Position numbers and translations under genes: made by a program. Below the pieces are notes generated by a model. That model did not search any database and was not told the origin of the DNA. It was given only the letters and a program-made list of their open reading frames with translations. Below are positions 23,580-50,732 of a stretch of DNA of 64,000 nt, one piece after another (the first letter of the stretch is position 1; every line of letters begins with the position of its first letter). This stretch comes from Salpingoeca rosetta. Lineage: Eukaryota > Protista > Choanoflagellata. The stretch lies in contig JAWQFM010000029.1 of assembly GCA_033442325.1 (NCBI GenBank), positions 842,332-906,331 of the forward strand, read 5' to 3'.

Positions 23580-42526
<18,947 letters not shown>

Positions 42527-44030: not shown

Positions 44031-44488
44031 CTACACAGAACTGTCCACGTCACACTTCTTTGCCTCCCGAATCAGCTTCATGGCGGGACCCATCGGCACA
44101 CTCGCCGCCTTTAGGGTTTGCATCGTCAGCTCTCCCTCCTGGACCAGCGCCGCCAGCACCTCCAACGTGTCAATGCCGTGCTCCATCAGCACAGATTCGA
44201 CGTGCGGCAGCAGCGAGTGGCGGTTGAGCCATTGAATCAGCTTGGGCTCAAATGAGCTTGAGGACGAGGACGATGGAGTGGCAGGCAGCAGCCTGCCAGG
44301 AGTTTCGGAGGAGGAGAAGGAGAAGGACGACTGTATGACACACAAGTCAGTCGCGTTGGGTGAGGCACAGCACGCGTCAAGTGGAAGGGAGAAGGAGTCT
44401 GACTGCTGCATGTACGAAAACAACCACTCACGAACACACAGCCACACATAGACAAGCGCACAACCACACACACCCACACACATACACC

Positions 44489-44546
<58 letters not shown>

Positions 44547-46959
44547 GCCATACCTGCGTGGAACGACGTGCAGTTGTTGGTCCCTGCGCTGCTTGCTCCT
44601 TGCTCCTGGCGGAGACGGCGACCTGGCGCACCTTCTCCGCAATGTCGTGCAGCTGCGACGTGTGGTCCACGCCGGCATCCATCGCAATCACTGCGTCAAT
44701 GTCAAACAGAGACAGCACCACTTTGCGCACGCTCTTGTGCTGCTGGGGCGGTGGCAGGTGCAGCACTTGCGAAAAGAACTGGTCGAGCTCTGCTGCCATC
44801 TCCTCACTCACAACATCCGGCAGCTTCGTTGCCAGCCGCTTCAGGCGGTCAAACGAGTCGTACTCGCTCACCTCTGCCCTGCTCATAACATGGTGACTGC
44901 TGTCGTGCCAGCCACTGCCAATGAAGAGCGGAACGATGCGGCGGAGGTGGATCTTGTCTGGATGCTGGCGAGCAATCTGCTGCAGCTCTAGCATCGCCAT
45001 CCACTCCAACAAGACGTTGTCGCACGTGTCAGTGTGGCCGAGCGAGCGCATCTGATGGATGGCACCCACGGAAACGACGGGACAGGCGACAGTACTGTTG
45101 TGCAGGGCTGTCATGCACGCGTGCTTGAAGTTGACGCCTGTCTCCAAGTTGTTGGCGTCCACAAAGGTTACCAGTCCGTGCTGCTCCAACTTTGGGTACA
45201 ATGTCATCACCAAACCCCGGTTGCCGCGTTGCCTGTGACGTGGTGGTCAGTGTCGAAATAAGAAAGGAAGAGAGAGGGAAGGAAAGACACCCAGTTCGCA
45301 CCGGACATTCATGCACACACACACACACACATACACACACACACACATGTCCCACCTGTAACTGATGAAGGCATCATATTTGTCCTGCTGACCCATAACT
45401 GGCAAGAGTGGACCATATTTGGCGACCAGATCCCCTGGTGACAGCAGCTGTGAGCGGCCAACGCGAAGCGCTTTCTTGTTCATGTGGTGGGTGTGCACGT
45501 CCTCGAAGAACAGCAGTCTCGTGTCACTGAATGGCAGCAGCAACGTGGCCTTGAGCTCGGGGTAGCGCTGCGTGACAGCTGTTGTGATGGTGTCGTACAG
45601 CATGTGCAGCAGCGTGCGAGGACGTGCAGCCATGACCTTGATCTTGATGCCGCCGACAGCCGGCACGAGCTGCATCTCGATCTCAGCAGCATCCATGAAG
45701 ATCACGGCGTCTGTGCGGCTCAACATGGGCGGTTCCGTTGCACCGTGCTGCATGTGTGCCATCACGCGTGCCAACACCATTGGGAACAGGCCCTCTGGCA
45801 GGAAGGAGGCTTGCTGCGTGTCTGCAATCTTGACGCTCACACCCCTCTTGAACTGCGTCAGGCTGAAGGCGACGTAGGCCGTCTTCTCCTCATATCCAAC
45901 ATACGGATTGGCTTGCTGTGCTGCTGCCGTGCTCAGCGAGACTGATGACGCCTGTTCATCCTCCAAGGTCATCGGCAGGATTGCTGGGACGAGGTACTGT
46001 TGGTGGTGTTGTTGTTGCTGTTGAGGACCGGTCAGCAGCACCATTGGCGCCGTGTACTGGATACACAACCCGTACTCCATCATGAGTTGGAGGAAGGGCT
46101 CAATCGTGCCACCTTCCAAATCCTTCCACAACACCTCCAGCAGACGACGGTGCAGGATACCGCGGTCAACGAGGTCGTCCCACACGTTGGCGCCAACGGC
46201 CCTCGCCTCACCATCACGCACGTCGTGATGCAGATCAAAGTTTCGGATAACGCGCGTCATCGTGTCCACCGCCCACTGCGGACTCAGGATCACATAGTCC
46301 TCCATGCCCGGCACGCTGTCAAAGTACAGCACCATGGAGTAGAGGTGCAGGAACTGAAGGCAGGCTTTCGTCTCCTCACGTGTGCGCAGCCCACAGGTGC
46401 GCGCAATCGCCACCACCTCGTCAAAGGTGAGCAGCGGTCGCTTCTCGTCGCGGGCGATGGCGTTGAGCTTGTCATAGAGATGGAGGTATGGCACAGCTAC
46501 CTCCTGGCTCACGTACTCCTGCGCCAGTGCTGTGGAGGAGATGGTCTGGCGCAGGTCCTGGATCATGGGATCGTGAATGGACTTGGTGTTGTCGACGGGC
46601 CAGAACCACAGGCCATGCTTGTCGTTGTGAATGACACCAGGAAAGGCTGGGTTGTGGCGCAGGCGACTGTGGATGTCGCGTGAGATCTGCTCATGTTGCT
46701 TCCGCTGACTGACCACATCAGCGAAGGTGCCGACGATGAGGACGGGTGCGCCCTTGGCGTGGAGGTGGAGGGAGGAGAGCCAGTGCTCCATAAATTCCCA
46801 CGCCTCTGCCCGATGGCTCTCATCTTGGTGCAACAGGTCCTCCATCGAGAACACCAGCAGGTACACCGCGTACCTGTTGGGTGGGTGGGGTGATGAAGGG
46901 AGAGGTGAATGAATGAGAGGTGGTGGAGGGACTGCAAGCAGACAAACGCACACACACAG

Positions 46960-47046
<87 letters not shown>

Positions 47047-47598
47047 GACCCACTTTGTGAGGAAGAAAGGGTGGAAGATGTAGAAGGTGGACTGGCCACC
47101 CAGGTCAAAGATCTTGAACGTGACCCGCGCTTTGCCCTCGCCCATGACGGCATCCATGTTGAACTCCTTGATCGCTTTCTCCATTTCCTCAGCAGACATG
47201 CCGGGCGTGGTGCTGCTGCTGTTGTCACGCGCAGCAGCATCACTTTGGCTGGAAGGGTTTAGGGTGGCCTGCTTCGTGGGCGCAGATGCTGACATCTGAG
47301 ACGTCTTGCTGGGCTTTGGGACGGTCGATGATGACGTGCGGGAGGATGGCCGTGGCCGCGTCTCCTTTGCATTCTGTAACTGCTTCTGCTTCTGCTTGGC
47401 AGCCGTTGCTTTCTCTGCCTTCTCGGCTTCCTGCTGCCGTTGTTGCTGATGGTGTTGGGTGATGCGGCTCTTCAGGTCTGCCTTTACCTTCATCATCGCC
47501 TGCTTCATTTGTAAGTCCACGCCGGATTCCTGCGCCAGCGCCGTGCCGCAGAGGCTGCGCATCAACTCCGAGATCTCCGCATCCAGCTCCTGCAAAGG

Positions 47599-47665
<67 letters not shown>

Positions 47666-50600
47666 CGCTTCTGCGAGGAGATGATCGTGTCAACCACCAC
47701 CTCTCTTCACACCCATGCGTCGCACACATCACATGCTCGCACCAGACAAGGGTACACACCTGCCAGTCGTGAACGTCCATTGATTCGACAATGACGGTGA
47801 GGTCGGTTGAGGCAACGCCATGCGTGGAGTGCTCGTGCTTGTTGAACATGTGACCCATGAGCGAGTGAAACGTGCTGGTTTTGCCGGCGCGCCCTTGGCC
47901 TATGAAGATGAGCTTGGCCCTGCTAGCCATGGTCGCGTTGAAGCGCGCAATGATCTCCCGCATGTGCTGCTGGAGGCGCTCCCTGCGCGCCTGCTCGGGC
48001 TGGTGGTGGTGGTGGTGGTGGTGGTTGTGTGAGACATCATGATTATGCTTGATACGAGACCACGGACAGCGTGATGAAGGAATGGTATGGGTGACGTGAT
48101 GCATTTGCTTGTGCGTTGCTGGCAAGCACTTGTCAAATCACTCACGTCTTGCGCTGCTTGTTCTTCTTGCTTCGGTCCGGCGGCAGGAGTGGGCGCAGGT
48201 GGCTCTTGTTGCGGTTGCTGTTGCTGTTGTGGTTGCTCCGAAGGCTTGCCGCCTGGCTTCAGCCCTTGGATGCTGGTGATGGCAGCGTGGCCGTTGGCTT
48301 GTGCCACATCGTAGGGCGTCTCTCCCTGCGTGTGTTGGAAAGGTAAAGCGCATGAGTTGAGGAAGGAGGGAAGCAGGGAGAGGGGAGGACACAGCGCAAA
48401 GCAAAGAAGCAGTTGTGTCACGTCTTCAGAAACAGCCACACGACGCGAAGCACACCTTCTTGTTCTTGATGGAAGCGTCTGCGCCCTTCTCGAGGAGCAG
48501 CTTCACAATGGCGGGTTGGTTGTGCCTGCAGGCAACATGTAGCGGCGTGTCGCCCTGTGGTTGGGTGGGGGAAGCAAGGGGCATGGCACGTGTGGTGAGG
48601 ATCTGTTGGAAACGAGCACACGGCCGGTGCAACCATGAGCGAGCGCCGTTCACAACAAACACACCCAGACACACACATGATGAACATACCTGCTTGTCCT
48701 GTTGGTTGATGTCTGCATTGTCCTGTTCGATGAGGGACGTGACAGCTGGAGCGTCGCCATCCCTGCAGGCGGCAAACAGTTGCTCATGCTGCCGCTTCTT
48801 CTCCGCGCGTGCTTCGTTAAAGGCGGCCCTGCCCTCACCGTCGCCAAACCTGTGATCCCACGCGACATTGGACGCAAGCATCACGCAGCATGTGTGTGTG
48901 AGGCGAAGGGTCGAGAGAAAGCAGGGAGCAAATGACTAGAGTGGAAGCACGCATTGACTGACCAGTATGTGTCGAGTTCTCGGTTGACGGGCAGCGCGGC
49001 ACCAAAGGCGCGGGCAGTGGCGGTGGAGTTGTATTTGATCCTAAACGAGGACACGTGGTGGTAGCGTGTGGTTGGGAACAAGCAGCAAGTGCGGTGCGTG
49101 GGTCAGGAGGGTTGGTGGTTAGGGTTGTGGAGAAATGCAAGCAAGCAGAGAGGAACACACAGTGTAGCGTGCACTCAAAAGAGTGGCGTTTGGTCACACA
49201 AATCTACAACAGGACACAGGCGCATGAGGCAGGCGCAACGCAATTGACGTACTCAAGCCGAGACATGGTGCGGTTCTGGTCCAGTGCGGCACCCAGCGCC
49301 GCACCGCCAACCGGGGTGATGGAGTTGTTATACAAGCTGCAAGTGGCAAGAAATGCATGTTGGAAGAGCAGGGGAACGGGTGGGCAAGCAACACGTGTCA
49401 GTGTCATGGATAAAAGTGGGTTGCAGATGGATCACGTGCACGCGTACTCGCTCGCACATCAGGTCCTACGACTTTTAAGGCACAATGGCGGAAGCAAAGG
49501 GGGCAAATGCAAATTGCACAGGATGTGGCAGCACTTGTGGCACAGGTGAAGGATGGAAGCATTTGTTGGTTAGTCAAACAAGCAAGTCGCACAGACATCG
49601 TGGGTGGCTTGCGGTGCCTCAACCTGCACATGTGTACTGCAGAAGAAGCGCCTAAAGACACACATTGCAAAGAGGAGCTTCCACTCACTCGAGTGCTGTG
49701 AGGGTCGTGTTGTGCTTCAGCATCTCCGCCAACGCCACGGCGCCCTCAGGGCCGATGGAGTTCTCACTCAGGCTGTCAAGACGGTATGGTGGATGCCACA
49801 CAGGGGGATGATGCCACATGGGTGAGAAAGAGTGAGTGAGTGCGTGATGATGATTGTTGTGGGTGGCAACACAGTCATCAATCCACACATGGGCACATGT
49901 GCACGTGATAAAGGTGCAGCAGCAGTGACGCAGCATACATGTGTGTGCGTGTGTGCGTGTACACACGCACTCGAGTCTTTCGAGGGTCGTGTTGTGCTTC
50001 AGCATCTCCGCCAACGTCACCGCGCCCTCATCGCCGATGGAGTTGTTGTGCAGGCTGTGCAGGCACACAAGAACCGCAGGGAGCGACGGTGAACACACGT
50101 CCAAACATGCGCAAGCAGGGGAGGAGAAAGGGGTGCAACATGCAACACCGCCACCCCAGTCAACCATGCATGTCACACGAAGCAGATTCATCATCACCAC
50201 GCACAAGAGCGTTTTGAGGCAGGTGTTGTCCTTGAGCGCCTCGGCCACCGCACGCGCCCCAATGTCGCCGAGGCCATCATCATCCAAGCTGTAATTCCAA
50301 ATGGTGTGTGTCATGAAATGAGCAAGAAGACTGAGGATACACAGAGCAAAAACATGAGGGTGCCAGTCCCAACCTGCCACAAACACACACAGTGTGTCCA
50401 GGCGGTGCGAGGGGACAGGACACGCACATGTGAACACCCAACAGCAAGCCACACCACGCCCATGGCAACACAAGGACAAGCCAAGCAGAGAGAGGGGGGA
50501 AGAATAAGCACAATCACAAGAAGTGTCGAAGTGTCCTTCTGTCCAACACATGCATGCATGTTCCAACACGTCGTTTTGGTTGCCTTTGCACTCACTCTGC

Positions 50601-50732
50601 TATCTCCCCACATGTGTTGTTGGCGATGGCCCTAATCTGGTCCTTCACCCGTTTCTCCTTCTTTGCAGGCAGCTTCGTCTGCGCCAGCAACGCCTCCACC
50701 TCCTCCCTCGCTCTCTTCTCTCCGCCGGACAT
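44031..50732 (-). CDS. ROCO-family protein: RI-like LRRs - ankyrin repeats - Roc GTPase - COR - TIR - SAM
   Basis: ATG at 50732 (MSGGEKRAREEVEALL...IRAIANNTCG). LRRs LHNNSIGDEGAVTLAEMLKHNTTL. ANK GDTPLHVACRHNQPAIVKLLLEKGAD. Roc KLIFIGQGRAGKTS, IFDLGGQSTFYIFHPFFLT, LIVGTFAD. COR LQFLHLYSMVLYF...VILSPQW...YLVPAILP...FLPEGLF. TIR YDAFISYR...TFVDANNLETG...DNVLLEW. SAM WLNRHSL...GIDTLEVL...MGPAMKL. Confidence 0.9.

What the first reader, a model, noticed from the sequence alone, without database searches (positions are those of the whole stretch)
44031..50732. LRR-ANK-Roc-COR-TIR-SAM: a ROCO protein built like an NLR, with a TIR-SAM output instead of a kinase
Seen: five LRR exons, two to three ankyrin repeats, Roc-COR, then TIR and a C-terminal SAM, with no kinase domain. 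Established: animal ROCOs (LRRK1/2, DAPK1, MFHAS1) lack TIR; LRR-Roc-COR-TIR proteins occur in prokaryotes; SARM1 uses SAM oligomerisation to activate a TIR NADase. Inference: ligand-gated Roc-COR dimerisation plus SAM polymerisation could switch on the TIR.
Basis: partly seen in the sequence, partly recalled or inferred. Interest (0 to 1): 0.75.

Follow-up and report, generated by a model that had tools for sequence, protein, structure and literature searches.

The report
Choanoflagellate ROCO GTPase with TIR-SAM tail
This is a real 14-exon gene of the choanoflagellate Salpingoeca rosetta that joins sensor-like repeats, a Roc-COR GTPase switch, an enzyme-type TIR domain and a SAM domain; it is one of about 40 copies that look like an immune-receptor repertoire, but the kind is already in print and a sister copy's TIR has been assayed.

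Summary
On the minus strand, 50732 to 44031, 14 exons with GT-AG introns encode the 1420-aa Salpingoeca rosetta protein PTSG_08933. It has five one-repeat LRR exons, 2.5-3 ankyrin repeats, Roc split by a ~148-aa insert, COR-A/COR-B, TIR and a C-terminal SAM. There is no kinase domain.

TIR passes Pfam's cut-off and keeps the catalytic Glu (E1171). SAM is below cut-off in this copy, but 20 of 22 paralogous exons match SAM_2, and a pLDDT-92 five-helix model matches almost only SAM domains.

The gene is not unique. About 40 loci in this genome carry the TIR exon. Other choanoflagellates encode Roc-COR-TIR, some with SAM.

The NLR-like reading of LRR-Roc-COR-effector proteins is published for bacteria. 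A 2026 preprint found that the TIR of a paralog 89% identical over this region makes cADPR.

The scan met this family before on other DNA of this genome (s1-432458, s1-442096, s1-436162, s1-436021).

Added here:
- LRR variability is concentrated on the concave face.
- The eight closest copies all lie 18-76 kb from contig ends.
- SAM exons are about four times more diverged at silent sites than TIR exons.

Verdict: a new member of a known kind, of moderate interest.

The parts
50596..50732 (-). Exon 1: start codon and N-terminal 45 aa (charged, no Pfam match)
   Evidence: Exon walk of P0001, donor GTGAGT; no family
48963..50288 (-). Exons 2-6 (50205-50288, 49971-50054, 49689-49772, 49253-49336, 48963-49040): five ribonuclease-inhibitor-type LRRs, one per exon, all phase 2
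   Evidence: Exon walk; LRR_6 5.5e-14 on P0001; per-position entropy shows hypervariable concave-face positions
48146..48849 (-). Exons 7-9 (48690-48849, 48456-48554, 48146-48325): linker, 2.5-3 ankyrin repeats (aa ~204-300), Q/P-rich linker
   Evidence: Ank 3.9e-14 on the exon piece; Ank_2 4.8e-14 aa 208-286 on P0001
47760..47999 (-). Exon 10: N-terminal part of Roc with P-loop GQGRAGKTS (47874-47900)
   Evidence: Roc profile positions 1-48; P-loop nearly invariant in paralogs; read from sequence
47161..47589 (-). About 148-aa low-complexity insert inside Roc (aa ~406-553), within exon 11
   Evidence: Roc matches in two stretches, profile 1-48 then 43-117; conserved in paralogs at 83%
47054..47160 (-). 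End of exon 11: Roc G3 motif DLGGQ (47092-47106)
   Evidence: Roc aa 554-639; D572-Q576 invariant in 13 family members
45382..46873 (-). Exon 12, main part: Roc C-terminal half (G4 GTFAD), COR-A (45976-46488), COR-B (matched part 45523-45813)
   Evidence: COR-A 3.8e-18; COR-B 6.3e-5, under cut-off; weak LRRK2 match E 0.009; paralog model matches C. tepidum Roco COR, Foldseek E 1.2e-5
45356..45381 (-). End of exon 12: first strand of TIR (KYDAFISYR), in the same exon as COR-B
   Evidence: TIR Pfam match starts at aa 1087; exon walk
44554..45232 (-). Exon 13: rest of the TIR domain (about 226 aa, long C-terminal extension); catalytic Glu E1171 = GAG at 45004-45006
   Evidence: TIR_2 30.1 bits, cut-off 28; E1171 nearly invariant and aligned to E1118 of the assayed paralog; dN/dS 0.22
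44259..44330 (-). Exon 14, first part: Ser/Thr/Pro-rich linker
   Evidence: Exon walk; least conserved region among close paralogs with SAM
44031..44258 (-). Exon 14, rest: SAM domain (aa 1346-1420) and stop codon (44031-44033)
   Evidence: SAM_2 18.8 bits here and in 20 of 22 paralogous exons; AF2 pLDDT 92, five helices; SAM domains fill the structural hit list; dN/dS 0.25

Best explanation
This is PTSG_08933, a cytosolic multidomain ROCO protein of Salpingoeca rosetta, and one of about 40 paralogs.

Shown here:
- The domain order is LRR x5, ANK, Roc-COR with intact G1/G3/G4 motifs, TIR with the catalytic Glu, then SAM. There is no kinase.
- The TIR and SAM exons are under purifying selection.
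- LRR variability is concentrated on the concave-face positions.
- The family is lineage-expanded, with Roc-COR-TIR(-SAM) relatives in other choanoflagellates.

Shown by others for a paralog 89% identical in TIR: the isolated TIR makes cADPR from NAD+ in E. coli.

Inferred: the protein works as an NLR-like sensor. The variable LRR face (perhaps with ANK) holds the protein off until it binds a ligand. The Roc-COR GTPase/dimerisation module acts as the switch, in the place a NACHT or NB-ARC ATPase takes in NLRs. Activation brings TIR domains together, helped by SAM self-association. The assembled TIRs then turn NAD+ into cADPR as a signal, or deplete NAD+.

Whether the trigger is a pathogen, a bacterial cue or an internal signal is not known.
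For: - Gene model and identity.
- Domains.
- GTPase motifs conserved.
- Catalytic Glu conserved and aligned to E1118 of the assayed paralog P0005/F2UB80.
- SAM fold.
- COR and TIR folds in paralog P0020: C. tepidum Roco COR at E 1.2e-5, plant TNL TIRs at E ~2e-4 and TMt 0.6-0.68.
- About 40 TIR-exon loci and about 22 close SAM-exon loci in the genome.
- dN/dS of 0.22 and 0.25.
- LRR entropy of 3.2-3.6 bits at positions 4, 6, 8 and 9 against 1.5 bits or less at most other positions, and LRR number varying by whole 28-aa units.
- Transcript-derived single ORFs with Roc-COR-TIR-SAM in S. infusionum, and gene models in Barroeca monosierra.
- The published concept for bacterial LRR-AP-GTPase-COR-effector proteins.
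Against: - No full-length member has been tested.
- No RNA evidence for this particular locus could be examined here.
- SAM is below Pfam's cut-off in this copy, and its oligomeric state cannot be predicted.
- The paralog's isolated TIR was active without SAM or any trigger, and the NAD+-depletion column of its row in Table S4 is empty. The need for SAM-driven assembly and a cell-death outcome are therefore both unproven.
- High variability at exposed LRR strand positions also arises under relaxed constraint. I could not run codon site models on the LRR exons because paralog DNA was no longer retrievable.
- COR-B is under the Pfam cut-off.
Confidence: 0.6

Rival explanations
1. The protein is a sensor for signalling or development rather than for immunity. 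The family reads environmental or bacterial cues, or internal signals, and uses cADPR as a second messenger (for example for calcium release) rather than as a defence or death signal.
For: The paralog's TIR is marked for cADPR, and the NAD+-depletion column of its row is empty. Roc-COR proteins such as LRRK2 act in signalling and trafficking (established knowledge). That S. rosetta life-history switches respond to bacterial molecules is my own knowledge, not tested here.
Against: These features are more typical of conflict-driven receptor families: about 40 copies, concave-face LRR hypervariability, variable LRR number and clustering near contig ends.
Confidence: 0.25
2. The TIR of this copy acts as a protein-protein adaptor, as classically described for TLR/MyD88 TIR domains, and SAM is a docking module. 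Enzyme activity would be irrelevant in vivo.
For: The isolated-domain assay was done in E. coli and on a paralog, not on this copy. By plain sequence, this TIR exon finds no solved TIR.
Against: The catalytic Glu and the surrounding DNVLLEW motif are nearly invariant across the family and in the distant Roc-COR-TIR relatives. This copy is 89% identical over the region to the active paralog.
Confidence: 0.1
3. The gene model is an artefact, or the copy is decaying. TIR/SAM would belong to another transcript, or this subtelomere-like copy would be a non-functional duplicate.
For: Some family loci do carry stops (for example C13:1705548, C30:59296 and C5:856678).
Against: - All 14 exons are open, with GT-AG at all 13 introns.
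- The first TIR strand shares an exon with COR.
- dN/dS is 0.22-0.25.
- The same domain order occurs in about 20 paralogs and in transcript-derived ORFs of another species.
Confidence: 0.05

Closest known systems
S. rosetta paralog PTSG_12359 (UniProt F2UB80; P0005), assayed in bioRxiv 10.64898/2026.04.20.719644
   Same: It belongs to the same family and has the same domain order. Its TIR region is 89% identical and has the same catalytic Glu context (E1118 there, E1171 here). The preprint's Figure 3 legend lists LRR, Roc and COR among the domains drawn.
   Different: It is another locus (1352 aa), with a shorter N-terminus in its model and fewer LRRs. Only its isolated TIR was tested. SAM and ANK are not in the preprint's list of abbreviations.
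Invertebrate ROCO-TIR proteins: sea-anemone NG1 (LRR-Roc-COR-TIR, PMC5094078), Aplysia ROC/COR-TIR proteins (PMC9334734), brittle-star Death-Roc-COR-TIR-Macro (P0213)
   Same: They are Roc-COR GTPases fused to TIR, often with LRRs, and are discussed as candidate innate-immune genes.
   Different: No ANK or C-terminal SAM is reported for them, and other accessory domains occur (Death, Macro, MBT, EF-hand). In the quick Roc-COR tree the two animal sequences sampled lie outside the choanoflagellate clade.
Bacterial AP-GTPase (Roc)-COR conflict systems (Kaur, Iyer, Burroughs, Aravind 2021, PMC8195603)
   Same: They have N-terminal rapidly evolving LRRs, a Roc-COR switch and a C-terminal variable effector position, and are explicitly compared with NLRs.
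   Different: They are prokaryotic. I found no close relative of the two metagenomic Roc-COR-TIR proteins I used as queries in the bacterial species genomes. The nearest named relatives of this gene are eukaryotic.
SARM1 / TIR-1
   Same: It combines SAM-mediated oligomerisation with a Glu-dependent TIR NAD+ hydrolase/cyclase whose major product in the same assay is cADPR. The SAM model here aligns to SARM1 SAM at Z 7.2, rmsd 2.1.
   Different: The order is reversed, and there is one SAM instead of two (ARM-SAM-SAM-TIR in SARM1). This protein has no ARM domain and carries a GTPase switch. It is not an orthologue; choanoflagellates have separate SARM1 homologues (PMC6040629).
LRRK2/LRRK1 and Chlorobium tepidum Roco
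   Same: They share the LRR-(ANK)-Roc-COR core. There is a weak ANK_LRRK2 match and a weak LRRK2 sequence match, and a COR fold match.
   Different: This protein has no kinase or WD40, carries a ~148-aa insert inside Roc, and has a TIR-SAM output.
Plant TIR-NLRs (TNLs) and animal NLRs
   Same: The logic of sensor repeats, an NTPase switch and a TIR enzyme is shared. The paralog's TIR model is closest to plant TNL TIR domains such as RUN1, SNC1 and RPS4. Ribonuclease-inhibitor-type LRRs are as in animal NLRs.
   Different: The switch is a Ras-like GTPase with COR, not a STAND ATPase, and the domain order is reversed (LRR at the N-terminus, TIR near the C-terminus).

Membership tests
ROCO proteins | Roc (Ras-like GTPase) domain immediately followed by a COR domain | tested here: met
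   Roc 58.9 bits (cut-off 27) and COR-A 66.2 bits (cut-off 35.3) in that order on P0001. A paralog's COR model matches C. tepidum Roco COR.
ROCO proteins | COR-B half of COR present | tested here: inconclusive
   COR-B scores 23.3 bits, under the cut-off of 27. The region is the most conserved among close paralogs, at 96%.
ROCO proteins | Nucleotide-binding motifs G1, G3 and G4 intact | tested here: met
   GQGRAGKTS, DLGGQ and GTFAD were read from the sequence and are invariant or nearly so in 13 members. Actual GTP binding is not testable here.
Enzymatic TIR domains (NAD+ cyclase/hydrolase) | TIR fold or profile match | tested here: met
   TIR_2 scores 30.1 bits against a cut-off of 28. Paralog P0020's model matches plant TIR structures at TMt 0.6-0.68. 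Plain sequence search of PDB found nothing.
Enzymatic TIR domains (NAD+ cyclase/hydrolase) | Catalytic glutamate in the active site | tested here: met
   E1171 in DNVLLEW is nearly invariant. It aligns to E1118, the residue listed as catalytic for F2UB80 in Table S4.
Enzymatic TIR domains (NAD+ cyclase/hydrolase) | Measured NAD+ turnover | not testable with these tools
   Only the paralog F2UB80 was assayed (active, cADPR).
SAM domains | Profile match above the curated threshold | tested here: not met
   This copy scores 18.8 bits (E 0.0019) against a cut-off of 20.5. Paralogs P0003 (20.9 bits) and P0019 (29.6 bits) pass, and 20 of 22 paralogous exons match at E 0.1 or better.
SAM domains | Five-helix SAM fold | tested here: met
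   The AF2 model has pLDDT 92 and helices at 5-13, 17-26, 32-40, 46-51 and 56-68. The VIA-align wide search is led by p73, EphA2/SHIP2, CASKIN2, Tric1, SARM1 and tankyrase SAMs at Z 7-8.4. Foldseek alone was not significant.
SAM domains | Self-association (polymer or ring) | not testable with these tools
   No prediction was attempted.
NLR / STAND receptors | NACHT or NB-ARC STAND ATPase domain | tested here: not met
   No such Pfam family was found on P0001 or on any exon. The resemblance is one of logic, not of membership.
SARM1 orthologues | ARM - tandem SAM - TIR order | tested here: not met
   The order here is TIR then a single SAM, with no ARM.
LRRK/DAPK kinases (the name UniRef gives these proteins) | Protein kinase domain | tested here: not met
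   No Pkinase family was found at E 0.01 or better. The UniRef name 'non-specific serine/threonine protein kinase' is not supported.

The most novel reading that the evidence does not exclude
The roughly 40-copy family would be a germline-diversified cytosolic receptor repertoire in the sister group of animals. It would be an NLR analogue in which a Roc-COR GTPase replaces the STAND ATPase and cADPR from TIR is the output. Ligand specificity would be written in four concave-face positions per exon-sized LRR unit. The copies would sit in chromosome-end regions, where the Roc-COR-TIR core is homogenised by gene conversion. Their SAM tails would stay old and distinct, giving each receptor its own self-assembly code.
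Probability: 0.3. Interest if true: 0.7.

Novelty: new member of a known kind. Interest (0 to 1): 0.35.

Why it matters
[quoted passage not shown] A published survey did not detect the NLR family in them (PMC6040629). A large family of LRR-GTPase-TIR proteins with an active TIR enzyme is therefore a candidate for how these cells sense intruders. It could also show whether cADPR-type TIR signalling predates animals.

For this particular locus the value is modest. The gene is annotated, a sister copy's TIR has been assayed, ROCO-TIR fusions are in print, and the scan has already reported the family.

The details added here give concrete, testable handles for anyone who takes the family up in S. 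rosetta:
- the concave-face LRR variability;
- the clustering of copies near contig ends;
- the contrast between a young Roc-COR-TIR core and old SAM tails.

Tried and rejected
**The joined step**
Exons were sent by reference.
- Full-length checks used the database protein P0001 that the search returned. Its match to the 14 exons was verified.

**Searches that gave nothing useful**
- A whole-family profile against PDB sequences was swamped by ankyrin proteins.
- Sequence searches of PDB found nothing meaningful with the SAM exon, the SAM-exon profile or the TIR exon.
- Foldseek on the small SAM model gave no significant match. The wider VIA-align search did.

**Bacterial origin: no support obtained**
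- An alignment of metagenomic Roc-COR-TIR proteins was too diverse to scan with.
- P0054 and P0022 found no relative in the 185,579 bacterial and archaeal species genomes. That method finds only close relatives.

**Checks that were cut short**
Four loci (C4:2149352, C4:2360955, C26:1046451, C32:760492) have unknown distances to an end, and no contig end was inspected for telomere repeats.
- The careful tree search did not finish in the time allowed, so only the quick tree (SH-aLRT support, midpoint root) is reported. Sequences covering fewer than 250 positions of the query exon were left out of it: hamster LRRK2 P0214 and the ~755-aa metagenomic proteins P0023, P0025, P0027 and P0030. P0048 gave no match in the extraction step.
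- The window's own TIR could not be folded whole, because its first strand is in another exon and P0001 exceeds 1200 aa. Paralog P0020 (64% identical in TIR) was folded instead, at a mean pLDDT of only 66.

**Readings rejected**
- SARM1 orthology (wrong order, no ARM).
- NLR membership (no STAND domain).
- Kinase annotation (no kinase domain).

Full report
**What is there**

The window is Salpingoeca rosetta DNA. The best match of the large exon is NCBI's hypothetical protein PTSG_08933 (P0001, 1420 aa). The window is C29:842332-906331 of the assembly.

P0001 can be walked codon by codon along the minus strand from the ATG at 50732 to the stop at 44031-44033. The walk covers 14 exons, and all 13 introns have GT-AG ends (tblastn map). 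Several introns are filled with (TG)n or (CA)n runs.

Exons were sent by reference, and full-length checks used P0001 as returned by the search.

**Domains**

Pfam on P0001 gives:
- LRR_6, 5.5e-14
- Ank_2, 4.8e-14 (aa 208-286)
- Roc, 7.3e-16, in two stretches
- COR-A, 3.8e-18
- COR-B, 6.3e-5 (23.3 bits, under the cut-off of 27)
- TIR_2, 7.4e-7 (30.1 bits against a cut-off of 28)
- no kinase

Exon pieces scanned alone give the same picture.

- **LRR.** Exons 2-5 are 84 nt and exon 6 is 78 nt. All start in phase 2 and each encodes one ribonuclease-inhibitor-type LRR.
- **Roc.** The domain is split by an insert of about 148 aa of low complexity (aa ~406-553). The P-loop GQGRAGKTS, G3 DLGGQ and G4 GTFAD are present and conserved across 13 family members.
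- **TIR.** The first TIR strand, KYDAFISYR, lies at the end of exon 12, the exon that encodes COR. TIR therefore cannot belong to a different gene. The rest of the TIR is exon 13.
- **Catalytic Glu.** The glutamate of DNVLLEW (E1171, GAG at 45004-45006) is nearly invariant in the family.

**SAM**

This is the weakest call, so I tested it separately.
- The exon alone scores 18.8 bits for SAM_2, under the cut-off of 20.5.
- 20 of 22 paralogous exons taken from the genome match SAM_2 (best 5.7e-6).
- With those exons as the alignment, AlphaFold2 gives a five-helix bundle at pLDDT 92.
- Foldseek was not significant for so small a domain.
- The search against 48,161 chains returned almost only SAM domains in the first 36 rows. 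These include p73 SAM (Z 8.4, rmsd 1.9, 61 residues), EphA2/SHIP2, CASKIN2, Tric1, SARM1 SAM (Z 7.2) and tankyrase SAM.
- The exon is under purifying selection (dN/dS 0.25), which a non-coding stretch would not be.

**Family**

- The TIR exon matches about 40 loci in this genome, and the SAM exon matches about 22 closely. The protein searches list about 30 annotated paralogs.
- Most paralogs have the same domain order. Variants include one with a PARP catalytic domain (P0048) and a branch without LRR/ANK (P0019).
- Among nine close paralogs, identity is lowest in the LRR (77%), the S/T/P linker (67%) and SAM (65%). It is highest in Roc and COR (91-96%).
- LRR number differs between copies by whole 28-aa units.
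- Over 50 LRR units, entropy peaks at positions 4, 6, 8 and 9 of the unit (3.2-3.6 bits). These are the x positions of xxLxLxxN on the concave face. Most other positions are at 1.5 bits or less, including exposed helix positions. Ligand-binding LRR surfaces show this pattern, but it does not by itself prove positive selection.

**Relatives elsewhere**

A HMMER search of 1.84 billion representatives with exon 12 gave 1674 hits at E 0.001 or better.
- The nearest outside S. rosetta are other choanoflagellates:
  - S. infusionum (Ras-Roc-COR-TIR-SAM and LRR-Roc-COR-TIR, as complete ORFs of transcripts)
  - Barroeca monosierra (LRR-Roc-COR-TIR and Roc-COR-TIR-SAM)
  - Hartaetosiga balthica
  - Mylnosiga fluctuans
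  - Didymoeca costata (Roc-COR-SH2-TIR)
- Next come unnamed metagenomic Roc-COR-TIR proteins, and protists: Hondaea, Paulinella, Cymbomonas and Guillardia.
- In a quick tree, 13 choanoflagellate sequences form one clade (SH-aLRT 99). The S. rosetta LRR-ANK group is sister to Barroeca P0194 (100), and S. rosetta P0019 pairs with Barroeca P0197 (95).
- So the Roc-COR-TIR module predates S. rosetta, and most of the copy number arose within its lineage.
- I obtained no support for a recent bacterial origin. The scans used could only find close relatives, so an older transfer is not excluded.

**What is already known**

- ROCO-TIR fusions are described in sea anemones (NG1, LRR-Roc-COR-TIR) and in bacteria, oyster and Trichoplax (PMC5094078). 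They are also described in Aplysia (PMC9334734). A brittle-star Death-Roc-COR-TIR-Macro protein appeared in my own search. The statement that animal ROCOs lack TIR therefore holds only for the four vertebrate ones.
- Kaur et al. describe bacterial proteins in which rapidly evolving LRRs, the AP-GTPase (Roc) with COR, and a variable C-terminal effector are compared with NLRs (PMC8195603).
- A 2026 preprint (bioRxiv 10.64898/2026.04.20.719644) expressed 154 eukaryotic TIR domains in E. coli.
  - Row 33 of its Table S4 is F2UB80 of S. rosetta: 1352 aa, TIR 1034-1255, catalytic residue 1118. It is marked active, with cADPR.
  - F2UB80 is P0005 (PTSG_12359). The length, residue 1118 = E and three short motifs all agree.
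  - Its TIR region is 89% identical to this gene's.
  - The Figure 3 legend lists LRR, Roc and COR among the domains drawn. SAM and ankyrin are not listed.
- Richter et al. 2018 noted Ank associated with TIR in choanoflagellates and did not detect the NLR family there.
- The scan itself has reported this family from other windows of this genome. I reached the preprint independently, before reading those notes.

**How it probably works**

Shown: the architecture, the intact motifs, selection on the TIR and SAM exons, the patterned LRR variability, and (for a near-identical paralog) cADPR synthesis by the TIR.

Inferred: an NLR-like sensor, working in these steps.
1. The LRR face binds a ligand.
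2. Roc-COR acts as the nucleotide-dependent switch and dimeriser.
3. SAM helps bring the TIR domains together, and the TIRs convert NAD+.

I put this at about 0.6. The main rival is a signalling rather than a defence role (0.25).

**Extra observations**

- **Location.** The eight copies closest to this gene (86-100% identity in the TIR exon) all lie 18-76 kb from a contig end. Among all loci with a known distance, 15 of 37 lie within 80 kb of an end, where 19.6% would be expected (binomial P 0.003). Contig ends are not proven chromosome ends, and repeated families can themselves break assemblies. The check for telomere repeats was cut short.
- **Age of the parts.** Within those eight copies, silent-site divergence is about 0.26 in the TIR exon but about 1.0 in the SAM exon. 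The ranking of copies by TIR identity does not match their ranking by SAM identity. This fits gene conversion of the core, or shuffling of 3' exons.

**Verdict**

This is a new member of a known kind. Interest is moderate (0.35).

The contig is not human.

Noticed in passing
G000 loci C29:886885, C4:76049, C14:1676479, C23:1193635, C30:18911, C26:20805, C13:1705970, C36:42512 (the window gene is at window 44031-50732): The eight closest family copies all lie 18-76 kb from a contig end. Of all TIR-exon loci with a known distance, 15 of 37 lie within 80 kb of an end, against 19.6% expected (P 0.003). This suggests a subtelomeric family, but the contig ends were not shown to be telomeres.
   Followed up: partly
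window 44034-44258 versus 44554-45231, and loci L002, L003, L007, L011, L012, L016, L017: Among the eight closest copies the SAM exon has about four times the silent-site divergence of the TIR exon (dS 1.0 against 0.26). The two exons also rank the copies differently. This is a mosaic history, fitting gene conversion of the core or exchange of 3' exons.
   Followed up: partly
L009 (G000:C4:38899-39204) and L010 (G000:C26:1046011-1046316): The SAM exons of two copies on different contigs translate identically, and their TIR exons score alike. This looks like a very recent duplication between two contigs. The C4 copy is 38 kb from its contig start; the distance of the C26 copy from an end is unknown.
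   Followed up: no
window 47161-47589 (aa ~406-553 of the protein): An insert of about 148 aa, K/Q/S/T-rich and of low complexity, splits the Roc GTPase between the switch I region and G3. It is kept in the paralogs at 83% identity.
   Followed up: no
P0001 and most paralogs (database names): UniRef names these proteins 'non-specific serine/threonine protein kinase' although no kinase domain is detectable. The label was probably carried over from LRRK-type proteins.
   Followed up: yes
P0048 (PTSG_12997, 2282 aa, another locus): One family member has a PARP catalytic domain among its precomputed Pfam families, besides LRR, Roc and COR, and its TIR-like region is 58% identical to this gene's. 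It may combine a second NAD+-using domain with the same switch.
   Followed up: no
window 27476-39199, + strand: A single open frame of about 3900 codons runs into an N gap at 38475-39041. It has 61-63% G+C, and its only Pfam signal is weak AAA/dynein-type P-loop matches near residue 2030. It may be a giant intron-poor ATPase gene next to the ROCO gene.
   Followed up: partly
window introns 46874-47053, 47590-47759, 44331-44553, 45233-45355: The introns of this gene are largely made of (TG)n or (CA)n microsatellite runs.
   Followed up: no
G000:C1:2745611-2745652 (contig of 3,591,424 bases); also C7:1538283 (contig of 2,229,637 bases): TTAGGG telomere-type arrays lie far inside some contigs. 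They could be interstitial telomere repeats or scaffold joins of chromosome ends.
   Followed up: no
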